Below are positions 20,578-37,271 of a stretch of DNA of 64,000 bases, piece after piece (the first letter of the stretch is position 1; the number at the start of each line of letters is the position of its first letter). The position numbers and the translations under genes were made by a program. The stretch is taken from positions 186,001-250,000 of the forward strand of contig NIVC01000011.1 of NCBI GenBank assembly GCA_002269645.1. The letters run 5' to 3'. The notes under the pieces were generated by a model. That model was not told where the DNA came from. It worked only from the letters and a program-made list of their open reading frames with translations, and did no database searches. This DNA is from Macrostomum lignano (Eukaryota).

Positions 20578-23500
20578 ATGCCTAGCGGACCGCGAAACAG
20601 CGCCGCAGCTTCATCGGAGGCTGGGTCCAGAATGCAGCAGCCATCACCTGCCGCTGCACCGCTCCGTCTCCACCGAGTTTGCGGCGCCGGCCTGTCAATC
20701 GCGGATGACAGACTGTCAGCCAGACGCCGAGACAGCTGCGAATGCGAAGCTGTGGCTTTCTCAGCTGAACCGTTGCAACTCAACCAGTGGGCCAGCTTCG
20801 AACTGCAGCAGCAGCAGCAGAAGCAGCGTCGGGAAAAACGTCGGGAACTCGAGGACTCATCCGCCGGCGGACTTCGAGTCGGCGTCACCACGCTGAATCC
20901 GCAGTCGTTGCAGGGCCGTCTGCCGAGATACTCTTACCCGCCGGCCGACTGGCCAGACGAGGATGCCGTCTGGGTCCAGCCGGTGCCCGAAGGCGAGCTG
21001 CACAGTGGCGGGCGGCTCACGCTGCACCTGAACACCTCCGGCCAGCTGCACTACTTTGTGGACGGGGAGCACCGCGGCTCGCTGCTGTCCTACCTGCCGA
21101 TGCGCCAGGCCGCTCAGCGGCCCTTCTGGCTGCTGCTGGATGTCTATGGCAGCACCCGGCAGGTCACCAGTGTGCCGACAAGTGAGTGTTTCAGTCTGCG
21201 AATGTTTTTGAGACTTGTTGCAGAATAACAGCAAAGGCGAGTAACTCGAGATGAATAGCAAAGGAGATGAAATCTACAGGCTATTTTTTTGCCCCTAGTA
21301 ATTATGCAAGCTATTTACAGTGAGCCATGATTGCCAGCCTAAAAAAGCTGTACCTTGCTATTTTTAATTCACTCTGAAGTGAATGTTCAGCATCACTTTC
21401 TTCTGAACGATATTTAGAATGGCTAAAGTTTTTGTAAAAGAATTTGCTAAATATATAGAAAGCTGAAGGCAAAAAAGAAGATAGATAGATAAATAAATAG
21501 ATAGATAGATAGATAGATCGATAGATATATAGATATATAGATAGATAGATAGATAGATAGATAGATAGATAGATAGATAGATAGATAGATAGATAGATAG
21601 ATAGATAGATAGATAGATAGATAGATAGATAGATAGATAGATAGATAGATAGATAGATAGATAGACATCTTCCTCTTGGTCAAGAATCTCTCGCCTCTCC
21701 ACTCCGCCCAGACGAAACCCCCATGGAGATCATCAGCCGCGGGCTGGGCGCACTGGAGGCCTACCACAGGGCCTGCGAGTCGGGCACCAAGCCAACCTAC
21801 CGCACCCGGCTGATGCTGTTGGGTCCGCCGGGCGCTGGAAAATCCTCGCTGAAACGAGCGCTGCTGGGCGCCTTTGGAGGGTGAGTTTTATTGAGCATAA
21901 TTTGGTGCGCTTTGGCCTAAAGTGGTAGTCTGGGTGCTCGTAAAAGTCACAGGAGGAAGGGGGAGAGACGGGAGGAGGTGGCAGAGAGGGAAGGAAGGGG
22001 GAGAGAGGGGGGAGGGAGAGGGGAGGAAGGGGGATAGAGGGGAGGAAGGGGGAGAGAGGGTAGGAAGGGGAGGGAGGGGAGGAAGGGGGAGAGAGGGGAG
22101 GAAGGGGGAGAGAATGGAGGAAGGGGGAGAGAGGCGAGGAGGTGGCAGAGAGGGGAGGAAGGCGGAGAGACGGGAGGAGGTGGCAGAGAGGGGAGGAAGG
22201 GGGAGAGGGGGGAGGGAGAGAGAGGGGAGAAAGGAGGATAGAGGGGAGGAAAGGGGATTAAGGTGAGGAAAGGGGATAGAGTGGAGGAAGGGAGAGAGAG
22301 GAGAGAAAGGGGGAGAGAATGGAGGAAGGGGGAGAGAGGAGAGGAAGGGGGAGAGAATGGAGGAAGGGGGAGAGAGGGGAGGAAGGGAGAGAGAGGAGAG
22401 GAAGGGGGAGAGAATGGAGGAAGGGGGAGAGAGGGGAGGAAGGGGGAGAGAGGGGAGGAAGGGGGAGAGAATGGAGGAAGGGGGAGAGAATGGAGGAAGG
22501 GGAGAGAGGGGAGGAAGGGGGAGAGAGGGGAGGAAGGGGGAGAGAGGGGAGGAAGGGGGAGAGAGGGGAGAAAGAGGGAGAGAGGGGAGGAAGGGGGAGA
22601 GAGGGGAGGAGAGAATGGAGGAAGGGGGAGAGAGGGAGGAAGGGGGAGAGAATGGAGGAAGGGGGAGAGAGGCGAGGAGGTGGCAGAGAGGGGAGGAAGG
22701 GGGAGAGGGGGGAGGGAGAGAGAGGGGAGAAAGGAGGATAGAGGGGAGGAAAGGGGATTAAGGTGAGGAAAGGGGATAGAGTGGAGGAAGGGAGAGAGAG
22801 GAGAGAAAGGGGGAGAGAATGGAGGAAGGGGAAGAGAGGGGAGGAAGGGAGAGAGAGGAGAGGAAGGGGGAGAGAGGGGAGGAAGGGGGAGAGAGTGGAG
22901 GAAGGGAGAGAGAGGAGAGAAAGGGGAGAGAATGGAGGAAGGGGGAGAGAGGGGAGGAAGGGGGAGAGAGGGGAGGAAGGGGGAGAGAGGGGAGGAAGGG
23001 GGAGAGAGGGGAGGAAGGGAGAGAGAGGAGAGGAAGGGGGAGAGAGGGGAGGAAGGGGGAGAGAGGGGAGGAAGGGGGAGAGAGGGGAGGAAGGGGGAGA
23101 GAGGAGAGAAAGGGGGAGAGAGGGGAGGAAGGGGGAGAGAGGAGAGAAAGGGGGAGAGAGGGGAGGAAGGGAGAGAGAGGAGAGGAAGGGGGAGAGGGGA
23201 GGAAGGGGGAGAGAGGGGAGGAAGGGGGAGAGGGGGAGGGAGAGAGAGGGGAGAAAGGAGGATAGAGGGGAGGAAAGGGGATAAAGGGGAGGAAAGGGGA
23301 TAGAGTGGAGGAAGGGGAGAGAGGAGAGGAAGGGGGAGAGAGGGGAGGAAGGGAGAGAGAGGGGAGGATTGGGGAGAAAGGGGAGTCAAGCTAAACAAGG
23401 TCAATTGCAGATTGAGTATGCCATATAAATTGATATTTATTCTGTTAGAGACTGACCAATGAAATGGTTGAAAATTCGATTTTTGCAAAAATGTACGACA

Positions 23501-35500: not shown

Positions 35501-37271
35501 CTCAGCCTCACTATGGGCCGTATGCAGAAAGCTTAGTCCAGACTAGCTAGTCCGGACTTGGGTAGTTCAATCTATAGTCTATGGTCTAGCTACCCTCGTT
35601 CTGTCTATAGTAGACCGGTCTAACTTTGTGTTTCTGCATACCAAATCCAAGTCCAGGCCTCTTACAAGATAATAGTTTATTACTTGAATATACATGTCAT
35701 CAGCAAGAATGGAGTTTTCTCTGTTTTTCATTAACAACAGGTGTCAGTCTACGAGTGACGAGTTCCGACTTGATCTCCGAACATCCGCCCACCTCCTGCC
35801 TGTCCTCTGAGCCGCCAGATGTGGCCGTAGTTGCCAAGGTGAGTTTAATTGCTGTGGTTAACCAATTAGGCCTGTATTTAAAAGTACGCATACTTTGGCA
35901 TTGCAGCTGCGCAAGTTCCTGGAGTCCACGCTGGAAGAGATTCGACAGATCTGGCTGAAACGCGTCACCTTCAGCCTAAGCGTCGCTTGCCCCTGCGGCG
36001 TCGCCTGCAAGCGACACAGTCAGGAGGCCTGCCAGCAGCAGGAGTGCCTGCACTTCCTCAGCCTGGACGAGTGCCTCAGCTCCAAGCTGGTCTGCTGCGG
36101 CCACAGGCGACTGAAAACCGCCCGATGGCGTCGGTGGTTCCCCAATCCGCAGCAGAGTGGAGGACGCGGTGGTCGCCATCCGCCGCCGCTCATCCCCTAC
36201 CACGTGCTGTCCGCGGACATCTGGAACATCGAGGTGCAGAAAGGCCACTGCCTGCCGCAGTGGATGAAGTCCGCCGCCAAGCTGTTGAACGGCGCACCGC
36301 CCGGTCAAGACTGGCAGGCGCTAGCGGAGCGGCTGGGCTACTCATCCGGCGACGTGCACCGGTTCAACGAGGACTTGAACCCGGCCCTGATCCTGCTGGC
36401 CGACTGGGTGATCTCGGCCGGCAACAGCGACTCCGCGGTGGACATGGCCAAGGCCTGCCTGGTGGAGCTCGGCCGCTGCGACATCGCTGACGCCATCGAC
36501 GCCGAACGGGAAGACGAAGGACGCCTGGACGCCCAGGTGTTCATCAGCTACCAGTGGGACAGTCAGGAGTCTGTGCGGCTACTCCGCGACCTGCTGGAGC
36601 GTCAGGGCTTCGCTTGCTGGATGGACGTTGGCCAGCTCGGCGGCGGAGACCTGCTGAACGCTCGAATCGACAAGGCGCTCAGAGGCTGCCGCTGCGTTCT
36701 GGCCTGCGTGACGCCGAAGTTCGCCTGCTCGCAGGCCTGTGTGCGCGAGCTGTGCCTGGCTGACCTGCTGCGCAAGCCCATCATCCCTGTGATGCTGGAG
36801 CGGACAGTGTGGCCGCCGCCTGGCTCCCTGAGTCTCGTGCTGTCGCCCTACGTCTACATCGACATGAACGGCGTCGGCGGCCACGGCGGCTCCGGCCGGC
36901 AGGCGGACACGCAGGCGCGCTACTTCGAGATCCTCGCCCAGGTCGGGAAGTACGCGGAGCCGCGACTCGTGTCGGCCAGTCAGCACTCCATCTCGACAAA
37001 GAACTCGCTGGATCATCTGACGCCGACGCGAGGCGGCGGTCAGCACGACCTGACGCCGGGTTCCGCCGCTGCCGCGGCCGCCGCCGCAGCCGCCGTAGCT
37101 GCCGCTGCAGCCGCTGCAGCCGCTGCTGGACGCGACAACGTGAGCTACACCTCGGATTTGAGCTCAGCCGGGAATCGAACTCCGACCCCTGGCGGCGCCG
37201 GTGGCGCCGGTGGCGCGCCGCGCTCTGGCGCCGTGTCAGTCAGAAAGTGTGCCGTCTGCAGCATTCTTTGA
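20578..37271 (+). CDS. Roco-family protein: Neuralized(NHR)-Roc GTPase-COR-Death-TIR with C-terminal CaaX, ~1390 aa, 11 exons
   Basis: Exons 20578-21181 (NHR: LRVGVTTLNP..FWLLLDVYG), 21712-21880 (P-loop GPPGAGKS), 24837-25096, 28555-29417 (WDFNG, VYVFVFDL, FLVGTHRN), 30372-30515 (PYMGEVVPLKW), 31089-31298 (FFHDLGLIVY, VILSPRWL), 31393-31563, 32387-32513, 34372-34529, 35741-35838 (98 nt, one base short), 35907-37271 (Death: DWQALAERLGY; TIR: VFISYQWD..CVRELCLA; ends CAVCSIL*). Phases are consistent except at exon 10. An additional upstream exon cannot be excluded. Confidence 0.88.
21478..21664. repeat. (ATAG)n microsatellite, Roco intron 1
   Basis: Read directly. Confidence 0.95.
21950..23390. 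repeat. Polypurine G/A satellite (e.g. GAGAGGGGAGGAAGGGG), Roco intron 2
   Basis: Almost pure purine tract with internal duplications. Confidence 0.95.
23930..24710. repeat. (GAGGGAGACAGA)n-type satellite, Roco intron 2
   Basis: Read directly. Confidence 0.92.
25197..25283. repeat. (CTCTC)n pentanucleotide microsatellite
   Basis: Read directly. Confidence 0.95.
25855..26400. repeat. 21-bp minisatellite (CATTGAGATTAGAGTGACATG)n
   Basis: About 25 units. Confidence 0.95.
26805..28385. repeat. ~24-26 bp purine-rich minisatellite (GATGGAGAGAGAAGGGTTGAGAATA)n
   Basis: Read directly, ~1.6 kb. Confidence 0.95.
29427..30305. repeat. (TAAC)n microsatellite starting right after the exon 4 donor
   Basis: Read directly. 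Confidence 0.97.
30695..30900. repeat. 12-bp minisatellite (TCTGATTCTCAT)n
   Basis: About 17 units. Confidence 0.95.
31590..32180. repeat. 21-bp G-rich minisatellite (GAGAGGGAGAGTGTAGGGGGC)n
   Basis: Read directly. Confidence 0.92.
32665..33305. repeat. Pyrimidine-rich minisatellite (CTCTCCCACTCTACCCTAGCTAC..)n
   Basis: Read directly. Confidence 0.9.
33830..34330. repeat. 15-bp pyrimidine minisatellite (CATCT[C/G]CCTCTCTT)n
   Basis: Read directly. Confidence 0.92.

What the first reader, a model, noticed from the sequence alone, without database searches (positions are those of the whole stretch)
20578..37271. Single-chain NHR-Roc-COR-Death-TIR-CaaX protein: a candidate membrane-anchored innate-immune switch
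Seen: one exon chain encodes a Neuralized homology repeat, a Roc GTPase plus COR region, a Cys/His-rich linker, a Death domain, a TIR domain and a terminal CSIL. Established: characterised animal Roco proteins (LRRK1/2, DAPK1, MFHAS1) carry LRR, kinase, ankyrin or death modules, not this combination; Death and TIR are the two MyD88 modules; NHR is a protein-binding module. Inference: GTP-state-dependent Roc-COR dimerisation could gate TIR/Death oligomerisation, like an NLR/STAND receptor built on a Roco chassis. Related invertebrate proteins may already exist unannotated in databases.
Basis: partly seen in the sequence, partly recalled or inferred. Interest (0 to 1): 0.8.

Follow-up and report, generated by a model that had tools for sequence, protein, structure and literature searches.

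The report
Flatworm NHR-Roco-Death-TIR lipid-anchored gene
This is one copy, in the flatworm Macrostomum lignano, of an uncharacterised gene found across many invertebrate phyla that joins a GTPase switch to two immune or cell-death signalling domains and a lipid-anchor signal; the domain combination is real but already recorded in databases, and this copy carries a one-base deletion that may break it.

Summary
Ten GT-AG exons on the + strand (20578-37271) join into one open frame of 1356 aa. It has significant Neuralized (NHR), Roc, COR-A, Death and TIR_2 matches, a Cys/His-rich linker and a terminal CSIL.

The window is Macrostomum lignano contig NIVC01000011.1. Two paralogous loci carry RNA-seq-guided single-gene models with the same architecture. 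More than 60 same-architecture proteins of about 1230-1390 aa occur in at least ten animal phyla. They are unnamed or mislabelled in the databases, and no functional study turned up. None appeared from vertebrates, insects or nematodes.

The C-terminal CaaX box (mostly CxxC-a-a-L), the P-loop, a likely zinc-binding module and the TIR glutamate are conserved across the family. The TIR resembles SARM1 and bacterial NAD-cleaving TIRs, not MyD88. The Death domain resembles p75NTR/NRADD.

Two corrections are needed:
- The architecture is not new. It has been noted in passing for Strigamia, Crassostrea and Aplysia.
- An eleventh exon (35741-35838) is 99 nt in the paralogs but 98 nt here. Normal inclusion gives a stop before Death-TIR.

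This is a new member of a known but uncharacterised family. The proposed GTPase-gated mechanism is plausible and untested.

The parts
20578..21181 (+). Exon 1. It holds the start codon and the Neuralized homology repeat (NHR, aa 32-199, nt 20671-21174).
   Evidence: Pfam Neuralized E=1.2e-22. The ATG is the first in frame after a stop. A GT donor follows 21181. The orthologue's NHR matches Drosophila Neuralized NHR1 at E=3e-31 by sequence and TM 0.94 by fold.
21712..21880 (+). Exon 2. It encodes the linker helices and the start of the Roc GTPase, with the P-loop GPPGAGKS at nt 21822-21845.
   Evidence: AG/GT borders and an open frame. The P-loop GxxxxGK[ST] is conserved in the family.
24837..25096 (+). 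Exon 3. It encodes the switch-I region (CIDLSSS) and the start of a low-complexity insertion inside Roc.
   Evidence: It is required to keep the frame; leaving it out, or using the other donor, gives stops. It matches P0001, P0002 and P0005. A comparable disordered insertion is present in the orthologues.
28555..29417 (+). Exon 4. It encodes the rest of the Roc insertion, G3 WDFNGH (28905-28922), G4 VGTHRN (29241-29258) and the end of Roc.
   Evidence: Pfam Roc E=2.4e-9 to 8e-9.
30372..30515 (+). Exon 5: the start of COR-A.
   Evidence: Pfam COR-A aa 655-823, E=2.6e-16 on the spliced protein. AG/GT borders.
31089..31298 (+). Exon 6: COR-A.
   Evidence: Pfam COR-A E=9.7e-9 on this exon alone.
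31393..31563 (+). Exon 7: the end of COR-A.
   Evidence: Weak Pfam COR-A match on the exon alone. It is part of the full match.
32387..32513 (+). Exon 8: the start of COR-B.
   Evidence: AG/GT borders and an open frame. It aligns to the orthologues. The COR-B fold is supported by the orthologue model, which matches LRRK1, LRRK2 and CtRoco RocCOR.
34372..34529 (+). Exon 9: COR-B.
   Evidence: It is identical in the paralogous locus L001 and conserved in the orthologues.
35741..35838 (+). Exon 10: a COR-B strand. It is 98 nt here and 99 nt in the paralogue (TACCGAG reads TACGAG here). Normal inclusion gives VSVYE-stop.
   Evidence: The exon is present in P0001, P0002, P0004 and P0142, and its IKVxVxRV motif is present in all orthologues.
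35907..37271 (+). Last exon. It encodes the final COR-B helix; the Cys/His module (35988-36104); the Death domain (36276-36500); the TIR domain (36537-36869 by Pfam, and to about 36953 by fold, with the conserved Glu in CVRELCLA at 36738-36761 and GGHGGSG at 36876-36896); an Ala/Gly-rich tail; CAVCSIL (37248-37268); and the stop (37269-37271).
   Evidence: Pfam Death E=5e-8 and TIR_2 E=2.7e-20. The AlphaFold model has pLDDT of about 80-90 for both domains.

Best explanation
Shown:
- The locus is one of at least three copies in Macrostomum lignano of a conserved bilaterian gene.
- The protein reads, from N to C: NHR, then a Roc GTPase carrying a long disordered insertion, COR-A and COR-B, a Cys/His-rich module, a Death domain, a SARM1-like TIR domain, a disordered tail, and a CxxC-a-a-L prenylation box.

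Inferred, as the most likely way it works:
- The terminal Cys is geranylgeranylated, because the last residue is Leu. The second Cys, three residues upstream, may be palmitoylated. Together they would hold the TIR end of the protein on a cytosolic membrane face.
- Roc-COR would work as in other Roco proteins, as a nucleotide-dependent switch between conformations or between monomer and dimer.
- The NHR, a SPRY-like peptide-binding fold, would supply the input or the partner.
- The switch would control self-association of the Death and TIR domains. These would then signal by recruiting Death-domain partners, by TIR scaffolding, or by TIR cleavage of NAD.

In this copy a 1-bp deletion in the 98-nt exon truncates the product before Death-TIR. 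That would not apply if the deletion is an assembly error or if splicing bypasses it.
For: Gene structure and domains:
- The window is identical to NIVC01000011.1.
- The paralogues PAA49455.1 and PAA73250.1 are single 1389- and 1390-aa models with the same five Pfam domains. They come from an RNA-seq-guided annotation.
- Between this copy and the paralogous locus, dN/dS is 0.05 (56 synonymous and 9 non-synonymous changes). Every indel is in frame except the one in exon 10.

Conservation:
- The same architecture occurs in molluscs, annelids, nemerteans, a rotifer, a priapulid, chelicerates, a myriapod, echinoderms, hemichordates and amphioxus.
- Of the 64 sequences screened, 52 end in CxxC-a-a-[L/I] and 56 end in a CaaX box; the other 8 do not, and most of those are visibly truncated. 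The P-loop, DxxG, the Cys/His ligands (57-62 of 62) and the TIR Glu are conserved.

Fold:
- The AlphaFold model of the Patella orthologue has pLDDT 79 and pTM 0.69. It matches LRRK1, LRRK2 and CtRoco RocCOR at E=1e-21 to 1e-13, and Neuralized NHR1 at TM 0.94.
- The model of this locus's TIR is nearest SARM1 (TM up to 0.80).
- The family TIR profile hits Cat1, AbTIR, PdTIR and SARM1, and the invariant Glu sits on their catalytic Glu.
Against: - No experimental data exist for any member of the family.
- The guanine-specifying Asp of G4 is absent here (THRN). It is present in only about a quarter of members, so nucleotide specificity and affinity are uncertain.
- The Trp four residues before the catalytic Glu, present in the NADase TIRs aligned, is missing.
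- COR-B is below the Pfam threshold in this protein.
- An immune role rests only on what these domains do elsewhere. NHR, a p75NTR-like Death domain and a SARM1-like TIR fit a neuronal or cell-death role equally well.
- This copy has a frameshift in a conserved exon, and GenBank calls only its 3' part.
Confidence: 0.6

Rival explanations
1. The TIR is the effector enzyme. Like SARM1 and bacterial or CRISPR-associated TIRs, it would cleave NAD+ once the GTPase switch lets the TIRs assemble. The protein would then act as a membrane-bound cell-death or metabolic executioner, not as an adaptor.
For: - The nearest folds are SARM1 and C. elegans TIR-1, followed by SPARTA and plant TNL TIRs.
- Profile hits are led by Cat1, AbTIR, PdTIR, SARM1 and BtpA/TcpB.
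- The invariant Glu (CxxE[L/I]xLA) aligns with the catalytic Glu.
- The Pfam match is to TIR_2, not to TIR.
Against: - The Trp at position -4 seen in the aligned NADase TIRs is absent.
- From my own knowledge, TLR TIRs also carry this Glu without being NADases.
- Identity to SARM1 is only about 20%.
- No assay has been done.
Confidence: 0.35
2. It is a MyD88-type adaptor. Death plus TIR would bridge Toll-like or IL-1-like receptors to IRAK-like kinases, with Roc-COR as a regulator.
For: - The order Death then TIR is the same as in MyD88.
- The Aplysia orthologue was listed among 'MyD88-like' proteins (PMC9334734).
- There is a weak MyD88 Death-domain match for the orthologue, at E=0.007.
Against: - The Death domain's best matches are p75NTR and NRADD.
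- No MyD88 TIR appears among sequence matches at E<=0.01 or among the top 50 fold matches.
- Flatworms and rotifers are reported to lack TLRs (PMC7958881), yet both have this gene.
Confidence: 0.15
3. This particular locus is a recently disabled copy. The 1-bp deletion would be real. The mRNA would then encode only NHR-Roc-COR (about 907 aa) or be degraded, and the paralogous loci would carry the function.
For: - The exon is 98 nt here against 99 nt in the paralogue, and inclusion gives an immediate stop.
- GenBank annotates only a 5'-partial Death-TIR ORF at this locus, with no gene called in the 10 kb upstream of it.
- The species is a recent polyploid (PMC10733133) and its assembly holds many duplicated blocks, so spare copies are expected.
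Against: - dN/dS is 0.05 and all other indels are in frame.
- The deletion lies in a CC run of a PacBio assembly, and the duplicated regions are hard to polish.
- Skipping the exon, or using the acceptor at 35704, keeps the frame.
Confidence: 0.4
4. The gene's main role is neuronal or developmental, not immune, for example membrane-proximal control of axon or cell survival.
For: - From my own knowledge, the closest characterised relatives of three of its domains are known chiefly from neural development and neuron survival: Neuralized for the NHR, p75NTR/NRADD for the Death domain, and SARM1/TIR-1 for the TIR.
- The lists mostly show one protein cluster per species and no large lineage-specific expansion. 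From my own knowledge, that is unlike many invertebrate immune receptor families.
Against: - From my own knowledge, Death and TIR domains are also core innate-immune modules.
- Roc/COR-type GTPases fused to TIR effectors are described as conflict systems in bacteria (PMC8195603).
- I found no expression data.
Confidence: 0.25

Closest known systems
Uncharacterised NHR-Roc-COR-Death-TIR proteins of other invertebrates. Examples are Strigamia maritima T1IR33, Branchiostoma XP/UniRef entries, Saccoglossus 'neuralized PATS1', Aplysia LOC101861518 and many RefSeq 'uncharacterized protein LOC...' entries.
   Same: The domain order and length (about 1230-1390 aa) are the same. So are the disordered insertion in Roc, the Cys/His module, the TIR motifs SYQW, CWMDxGQxGGGD and CxxExxLA, the GGHGGxG motif and the CxxC-a-a-L end. 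Identity is 32-40% over 75-79% of the query.
   Different: The M. lignano protein has a 28-aa N-terminal extension and longer Ala/Gln/Gly/Ser runs. G3 reads DFNGH instead of DFAGQ. In this locus exon 10 is frameshifted.
Nematostella 'novel gene 3' (LOC5519167, A7RN39): kinase-SH3-Roc-COR-Death-TIR (van der Burg et al. 2016, PMC5094078).
   Same: It has the same Roc-COR-Death-TIR core, with 30% identity over 77% of the query (P0087). A Cys-rich stretch (CVMCPSC...) sits at the equivalent place, and the TIR Glu is kept.
   Different: A protein kinase replaces the NHR. There is no CaaX box (it ends ...YCSK) and no GGHGG motif.
Characterised Roco proteins: LRRK1, LRRK2, DAPK1, MFHAS1 and the Chlorobium tepidum Roco protein.
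   Same: It has the Roc-COR tandem, with fold matches at E=1e-21 to 1e-13 and TM 0.72 to the CtRoco RocCOR. There are sequence matches to LRRK2 Roc.
   Different: It has no LRR, ankyrin, kinase or WD40 domains. It adds an NHR, a Zn-like module, Death-TIR and a CaaX box. Roc carries an insertion of roughly 130-190 aa. The G4 Asp is not conserved.
SARM1 / C. elegans TIR-1 (NAD+ hydrolase TIR).
   Same: This is the nearest TIR fold, with TM up to 0.80 and rmsd of about 3 A. The family's invariant Glu aligns with the catalytic Glu of the bacterial and CRISPR-associated NADase TIRs printed. The SARM1 alignment itself was not printed, and my hand alignment with SARM1's FISY and KEI motifs is from memory.
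   Different: There are no ARM or SAM domains. Identity is about 20%. The Trp before the Glu is absent. Activity is untested.
MyD88.
   Same: A Death domain is followed by a TIR domain.
   Different: Neither domain is closest to MyD88's. The protein is about 1350 aa, with a GTPase switch and a lipid anchor.
Invertebrate ARM/HEAT-Death-TIR-TIR proteins (P0164, P0173, P0181). These are probably the 'MyD88-like with Armadillo fold' proteins of PMC9334734.
   Same: The Death-TIR cassette is 41-46% identical to the family's. All three examined also end in a CaaX-like box: CVVI, CVLL and CCVL.
   Different: They have an ARM/adaptin-like N-terminus instead of NHR-Roc-COR, and two TIR domains.
Bacterial AP-GTPase/COR proteins with TIR and other effectors (Kaur, Iyer, Burroughs, Aravind 2021, PMC8195603), and brown-algal LRR-ROCO candidate receptors (PMC11378527).
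   Same: The logic is the same: a Roc/COR-type GTPase core coupled to a variable sensor and to an effector such as TIR.
   Different: These are analogues, not orthologues. Their sensor is an LRR, and they have no Death domain or CaaX box.

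Membership tests
Roco proteins (Roc-COR tandem GTPases) | A Ras-like Roc domain with nucleotide-binding motifs G1, G3 and G4 | tested here: inconclusive
   G1 is GPPGAGKS and G3 is DFNG, and both are present. The Roc Pfam match is above its threshold (37.9 against 27 bits). G4 reads THRN, so the guanine-specifying Asp is replaced by Asn. That Asp is present in only about 16 of 60 family members.
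Roco proteins (Roc-COR tandem GTPases) | A COR domain (COR-A plus COR-B) directly after Roc | tested here: met
   COR-A scores 60.2 bits against a cut-off of 35.3. COR-B is weak by sequence (16.4 against 27). However, the orthologue model matches the full RocCOR of LRRK1, LRRK2 and CtRoco (E=1e-21 to 1e-17, TM 0.72).
Roco proteins (Roc-COR tandem GTPases) | GTP binding and hydrolysis, with nucleotide-dependent dimerisation | not testable with these tools
   This needs purified protein.
NHR-Roc-COR-Death-TIR-CaaX invertebrate orthologue group | All five domains in this order in one polypeptide | tested here: met
   Met for the skipped-exon ORF of the window and for the paralogous loci.
NHR-Roc-COR-Death-TIR-CaaX invertebrate orthologue group | A conserved Cys/His module, the TIR motifs and a C-terminal CxxC-a-a-L | tested here: met
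   CPCx4CxxHx4Cx4CxH...C...C.H lies at aa 930-968. SYQW, CWMDVGQLGGGD, CVRELCLA, GGHGGSG and CAVCSIL are all present.
NHR-Roc-COR-Death-TIR-CaaX invertebrate orthologue group | An intact reading frame through all conserved exons at this locus | tested here: not met
   Exon 35741-35838 is 98 nt against 99 nt in the paralogue, and inclusion gives VSVYE-stop. I could not tell whether this is an assembly error.
MyD88 | [quoted passage not shown] | tested here: not met
   The Death domain's best matches are NRADD and p75NTR (E=1e-5). MyD88's Death domain appears only at E=0.007 for the orthologue. No MyD88 TIR appears at E<=0.01 or among the top 50 folds.
NADase-type TIR domains (SARM1, AbTIR, Cat1, plant TNL) | A catalytic Glu at the conserved position | tested here: met
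   The Glu in CVRELCLA aligns with the Glu of Cat1, AbTIR and PdTIR. It is invariant in the 15-sequence TIR alignment and near-invariant (at least 90%) among the 62 aligned sequences.
NADase-type TIR domains (SARM1, AbTIR, Cat1, plant TNL) | A Trp four residues before the Glu, and measurable NAD+ cleavage | tested here: inconclusive
   The Trp is absent; the family has a variable residue there and an invariant Cys at position -3. Activity cannot be tested here.
CaaX-prenylated proteins | A C-terminal Cys-aliphatic-aliphatic-X box | tested here: met
   The box is CSIL here. A CaaX box with Leu or Ile last is present in 56 of the 64 sequences screened, which covers all those with an intact C-terminus. 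From established knowledge, a final Leu points to geranylgeranyl transferase I.
CaaX-prenylated proteins | Actual lipid modification and membrane association | not testable with these tools
   This needs metabolic labelling or localisation of Cys-to-Ser mutants.
NLR / STAND receptors | A NACHT or NB-ARC STAND NTPase domain | tested here: not met
   There is no such Pfam match. The only NTPase is the Ras-like Roc. The AAA_16 and AAA matches are sub-threshold hits to the P-loop. Any resemblance is functional only.

The most novel reading that the evidence does not exclude
The family may be a lipid-anchored animal counterpart of the bacterial GTPase-TIR conflict systems and of SARM1. A geranylgeranylated Roco GTPase at a membrane would sense a ligand through its NHR. 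On nucleotide exchange it would release a SARM1-like TIR to cleave NAD+, and a Death domain to recruit partners. That would give a TLR-independent cell-death or defence pathway. It would have been kept in at least ten invertebrate phyla, including flatworms and rotifers, which are reported to lack TLRs. It would have been lost in vertebrates, insects and nematodes, which would explain why it has never been studied.
Probability: 0.2. Interest if true: 0.75.

Novelty: new member of a known kind. Interest (0 to 1): 0.45.

Why it matters
The gene belongs to a widely conserved family for which I found no functional study. My searches found no member in the usual model animals: vertebrates, insects and nematodes.

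Three features came out of this analysis, and the papers I could read do not mention them:
- an invariant prenylation box;
- a probable zinc module after COR;
- a TIR of the SARM1 and bacterial type that keeps the catalytic glutamate.

Together they make a concrete hypothesis that can be tested: a membrane-tethered GTPase switch driving TIR and Death output without Toll-like receptors.

Macrostomum lignano has an established transgenesis method (PMC5730564), and from my own knowledge RNAi as well, so it is a practical place to run the test. For genome annotation, this locus shows how one missing base in a duplicated region splits a gene model.

Tried and rejected
- The first homologue search, with the full spliced protein, returned only the M. 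lignano paralogue. Poly-Ala, poly-Gln and poly-Gly words swamped the candidate list. Removing the low-complexity runs fixed this.
- Leaving out exon 3, or using its alternative donor at 24930, breaks the frame. Both options were rejected.
- I enumerated every in-frame AG...GT alternative around exon 10. Only the upstream acceptor at 35704, which has a weak pyrimidine tract, keeps the frame with the normal donor. This is possible but unsupported.
- The AlphaFold model of the last exon with 8 sequences gave low confidence for the Cys/His linker. The full-length Patella orthologue with 62 sequences modelled that region at pLDDT of about 85. I could not read the coordinates to check metal-site geometry.
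- The key survey of invertebrate TIR proteins (Gerdol et al. 2017, Dev Comp Immunol) is not held. I therefore could not confirm which 'ecTIR-DC' family this one corresponds to.
- No paper text mentions Mlig033033 or Mlig033067, so I obtained no expression data.
- P0142, an 1845-aa M. lignano entry, looked like an independent check on the deletion. It is a read-through mis-prediction that carries the other allele type, so it says nothing about this copy.
- I considered the NLR/STAND reading and rejected it, because no STAND NTPase is present.

Full report
**Where the window comes from.** The region is eukaryotic. Its introns are packed with micro- and minisatellites. Window 25740-47271 is identical to GenBank NIVC01000011.1 positions 211740-233271, from the Macrostomum lignano assembly Mlig_3_7, GCA_002269645.1. 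The window therefore corresponds to positions 186001-250000 of that contig.

**Checking the observation.**
- Open segments on the + strand between 20.5 and 37.3 kb carry recognisable Neuralized, Roc, COR-A, Death and TIR_2 matches.
- I chose the strongest AG/GT sites at each segment border. Ten exons then joined into a 4071-nt ORF of 1356 aa that starts at the ATG at 20578 and stops at 37269-37271. Leaving out exon 3, or using its other donor, breaks the frame.
- Pfam on the spliced protein gave Neuralized 1.2e-22, Roc 2.4e-9, COR-A 2.6e-16, COR-B 0.008 (below threshold), Death 1.9e-7 and TIR_2 9.3e-20.
- The P-loop GPPGAGKS, G3 DFNGH, G4 THRN, a Cys/His stretch (aa 930-968) and the terminal CAVCSIL are all present.

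**The missed exon and the one-base deletion.**
- The nearest database protein is PAA49455.1 (BOX15_Mlig033033g2, 1389 aa). It is 96% identical, covers the whole query and has the same five Pfam domains. A second paralogue, PAA73250.1, has 1390 aa.
- Both paralogues contain 33 extra residues (VSVYRVTSSDLISEHPPTSCLSSEPPDVAVVAK) between my exons 9 and 10.
- The matching window exon is 35741-35838, with good AG and GTGAGT borders. It is 98 nt long. The paralogous locus L001 has 99 nt, reading TACCGAG where the window reads TACGAG.
- Included normally, the exon reads VSVYE-stop. The product would then end after COR and lack Death, TIR and CaaX.
- All orthologues have the equivalent IKVxVxRV strand, so the exon is a constitutive part of COR-B and not an optional cassette.
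- At this locus GenBank carries only a 5'-partial 487-aa Death-TIR protein (PAA94363.1, window 35740-37271). It begins in the shifted frame, and no gene is called in the 10 kb upstream of it.
- Apart from this base the copy looks healthy. Against L001 there are 56 synonymous and 9 non-synonymous differences, giving dN/dS of 0.05, and all other indels are multiples of three.
- The assembly is PacBio/Canu polished with Pilon, and it contains 180-312 Mb of duplicated sequence (blocks at least 95% identical) (PMC5730564). A residual error in the CC run is therefore as plausible as a recent real mutation.
- Skipping the exon, or using an upstream acceptor at 35704, keeps the frame. Neither has any supporting evidence.

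**Is it one gene?**
- The Mlig_3_7 GenBank annotation derives from genome-guided RNA-seq assembly (StringTie/TACO, with TransDecoder ORFs). The two full-length paralogue models are therefore transcript-supported.
- In other species, full-length proteins of 1238-1316 aa sit on 4.2-5.2 kb contigs from assemblies of public sequencing runs. That leaves almost no room for introns, so these contigs are most likely cDNA.
It is not met for the gene. At this locus the split annotation is explained by the frameshift.

**Distribution.**
- A profile built from six cleaned sequences recovered the same architecture, at about 1230-1390 aa. It appeared in gastropods, bivalves, a chiton, cephalopods, nemerteans, annelids, hemichordates, echinoderms, two amphioxus species, a priapulid, ticks and a spider.
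- An exhaustive HMMER scan of 1.84 billion representative proteins gave 356 proteins at E<=1e-30. About ten of the 50%-identity cluster representatives matched in a single stretch over nearly the whole query.
- Name look-ups on those hits added sea stars, the centipede Strigamia (UniProt T1IR33), a soft tick, a bdelloid rotifer, more spiders, mites and Limulus.
- No same-architecture protein from a vertebrate, tunicate, insect, crustacean or nematode appeared. Vertebrates appeared only as NEURL4, through the NHR alone.
- Where the sources name these proteins, the names are 'uncharacterized protein', 'hypothetical protein' or misleading labels such as 'non-specific serine/threonine protein kinase', 'protein neuralized' and 'neuralized PATS1'. 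I found no functional study.
- Nematostella has a relative in which a kinase replaces the NHR (P0087).

**What the literature already says.**
- Van der Burg et al. 2016 (PMC5094078) describe the sea-anemone kinase-SH3-Roc-COR-Death-TIR gene. They note that the most similar database architecture has 'neuralized' in place of the kinase, in Strigamia and Crassostrea.
- The Aplysia immunome paper (PMC9334734) draws NHR, ROC, COR, Death and TIR in its Figure 6. It lists a ROCO-containing 'MyD88-like' gene, LOC101861518.
- Gerdol et al. 2017 defined 'evolutionarily conserved TIR-domain-containing' families (cited in PMC6321704). That paper is not held, so I cannot give the family number.
- The idea that a Roc/COR-type GTPase can serve as an immune-receptor core with TIR effectors is published for bacteria (PMC8195603). 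It has also been proposed for brown algae (PMC11378527).
- The architecture and the general idea are therefore known. No functional study of this family turned up.

**Conserved features.**
- Lipid-anchor box. Of the 64 sequences screened, 52 end in CxxC-a-a-[L/I] and 56 end in a CaaX box; the other 8 do not, and most of those are visibly truncated. Examples are CTIL, CVIL, CSIL and CAIL, while oysters have CVCxIL. From established knowledge of CaaX processing, a final Leu directs geranylgeranylation. A nearby second Cys is a common palmitoylation site.
- Roc motifs. The P-loop and WDFxG are conserved. Gln follows G3 in most members, but it is His here and Leu in ticks.
- G4. The residue after VGTH[RK] is Asn in 31 of the 64 sequences screened, Asp in 16, and otherwise Ser, Ala, Gly, His, Lys, Arg or Glu. 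The guanine-specifying Asp is therefore not a family feature.
- Roc insertion. Roc carries a disordered insertion of roughly 130-190 aa between switch I and G3, containing two conserved helices (LEEEYxxAxAxNIVQEL and VPxRVVxLVQxML).
- Cys/His module. Nine to ten Cys/His positions after COR-B are conserved in 57-62 of 62 sequences. In the orthologue model they fold into a small beta-rich module with pLDDT of about 85. This suggests two zinc sites, but that is an inference.
- TIR motifs. SYQW (or SYNW), CWMDxGQxGGGD, CxxE[LIV]xLA and WPPPG are nearly invariant, as is a GGHGGxG motif that follows them.

**Fold and nearest characterised domains.**
- The Patella orthologue model (62-sequence alignment, pLDDT 79, pTM 0.69) matches LRRK1, the C. 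tepidum Roco LRR-Roc-COR and LRRK2 at E=3e-21 to 1e-13. It also matches Drosophila Neuralized NHR1 at TM 0.94 and rmsd 1.1 A.
- By sequence, the Death domain is nearest NRADD and p75NTR (E=1e-5).
- The model of this locus's own last exon (Death and TIR at pLDDT 80-90) is nearest SARM1 and C. elegans TIR-1 (TM up to 0.80). SPARTA TIR-APAZ, plant TNL TIRs and TLR1/TLR15 follow. MyD88 is not in the top 50.
- A TIR profile of the family hits Cat1, AbTIR-like proteins, PdTIR, SARM1 and BtpA/TcpB, with the invariant Glu aligned on their catalytic Glu. The Trp four residues earlier is missing.
- The Death-TIR cassette is 41-46% identical to that of a large ARM/adaptin-like-Death-TIR-TIR family. The three members I checked also end in CaaX-like boxes. 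This hints that Death-TIR-CaaX is a mobile module.

**Mechanism.**
- Shown: the domain composition, its conservation, and the folds.
- Inferred: prenyl (and possibly palmitoyl) anchoring; a Roco-type nucleotide switch; ligand or partner binding by the NHR; and output through Death and TIR oligomerisation.
- Whether the TIR acts as a scaffold or as an NAD-cleaving enzyme is open. The fold and the Glu favour an enzyme, and the missing Trp counts against it.
- A role as a TLR adaptor is unlikely. Flatworms and rotifers are reported to lack TLRs (PMC7958881), yet both have the gene.
- An immune role is plausible but rests on domain associations only. A neuronal or cell-death role fits the nearest relatives of three of its domains equally well.

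**Verdict.** The single-chain claim holds for the gene, but it is uncertain for this copy because of the 1-bp deletion. I class this as a new member (the flatworm copy) of a known, uncharacterised family, with moderate interest.

Noticed in passing
window 42938-43447 (-), with possible further exons at 43718-44254 (-) and 42162-42908 (-): An ORF with a Mab-21 C-terminal (HhH/H2TH-like) domain match (E=5e-5), about 5.7 kb downstream on the opposite strand. Mab-21 is the family that contains cGAS. It could be a Mab21 or cGAS-like gene next to the TIR gene.
   Followed up: partly
window 40176-41630 (-): A single-exon 484-aa ORF made of two SET-domain halves (Pfam SET, E=5e-16, two stretches). It is annotated in GenBank as a 484-aa gene.
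   Followed up: partly
window 44681-49180 (-), 54655-55269 (-), 56948-57763 (-), 59834-61387 (-): Other neighbours are a long coiled-coil protein (part of a 1331-aa GenBank gene), two TLC-domain ORFs in tandem, and an XK-related protein (E=2e-82).
   Followed up: partly
window 21900-23450, 23900-24700, 25850-26370, 26800-28400, 31600-32200, 32600-33300, 33800-34350; also much of 1-20000: The gene's introns and the upstream 20 kb are filled with long purine-rich or pyrimidine-rich micro- and minisatellite arrays. These produce spurious ORFs of 100-530 aa on both strands and strong local GC and AT skew.
   Followed up: no
window 29241-29258 (VGTHRN) and the family alignment: The G4 position that normally holds the guanine-specifying Asp is Asn here and varies across the family (N, D, S, A, G, H, K, R, E). 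From my own knowledge, the equivalent D-to-N change in Ras-like GTPases shifts specificity towards xanthine nucleotides. Nucleotide preference in this family is therefore worth testing.
   Followed up: partly
window 36876-36896 (GGHGGSG) and orthologues: A nearly invariant GVGGHGG[ST]G motif follows the TIR core, just before its last helix. I know of no described function for it. It is absent from the Nematostella kinase-containing relative.
   Followed up: no
proteins P0164, P0173, P0181 (other species): The ARM/adaptin-like-Death-TIR-TIR family shares a Death-TIR cassette that is 41-46% identical. Its members also end in CaaX-like boxes (CCVL, CVVI, CVLL). Lipid-anchored Death-TIR modules may therefore be a wider invertebrate theme.
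   Followed up: partly
protein P0142 (M. lignano, 1845 aa): This database entry starts inside COR-B of a paralogue and runs through Death-TIR. It then continues for about 1200 residues of apparent read-through, including antisense translation of the neighbouring SET-domain and coiled-coil genes. It is a mis-predicted fusion.
   Followed up: partly
proteins P0004-P0006 (UniProt A0A1I8ISS8, A0A1I8IU15, A0A1I8IUR7): In the set of shorter M. lignano entries held by UniProt, the gene is split into three fragments of 162, 599 and 223 aa. One of them is named 'FANCA', which looks like a mislabel. The 599-aa fragment carries this window's allele-specific residues.
   Followed up: partly
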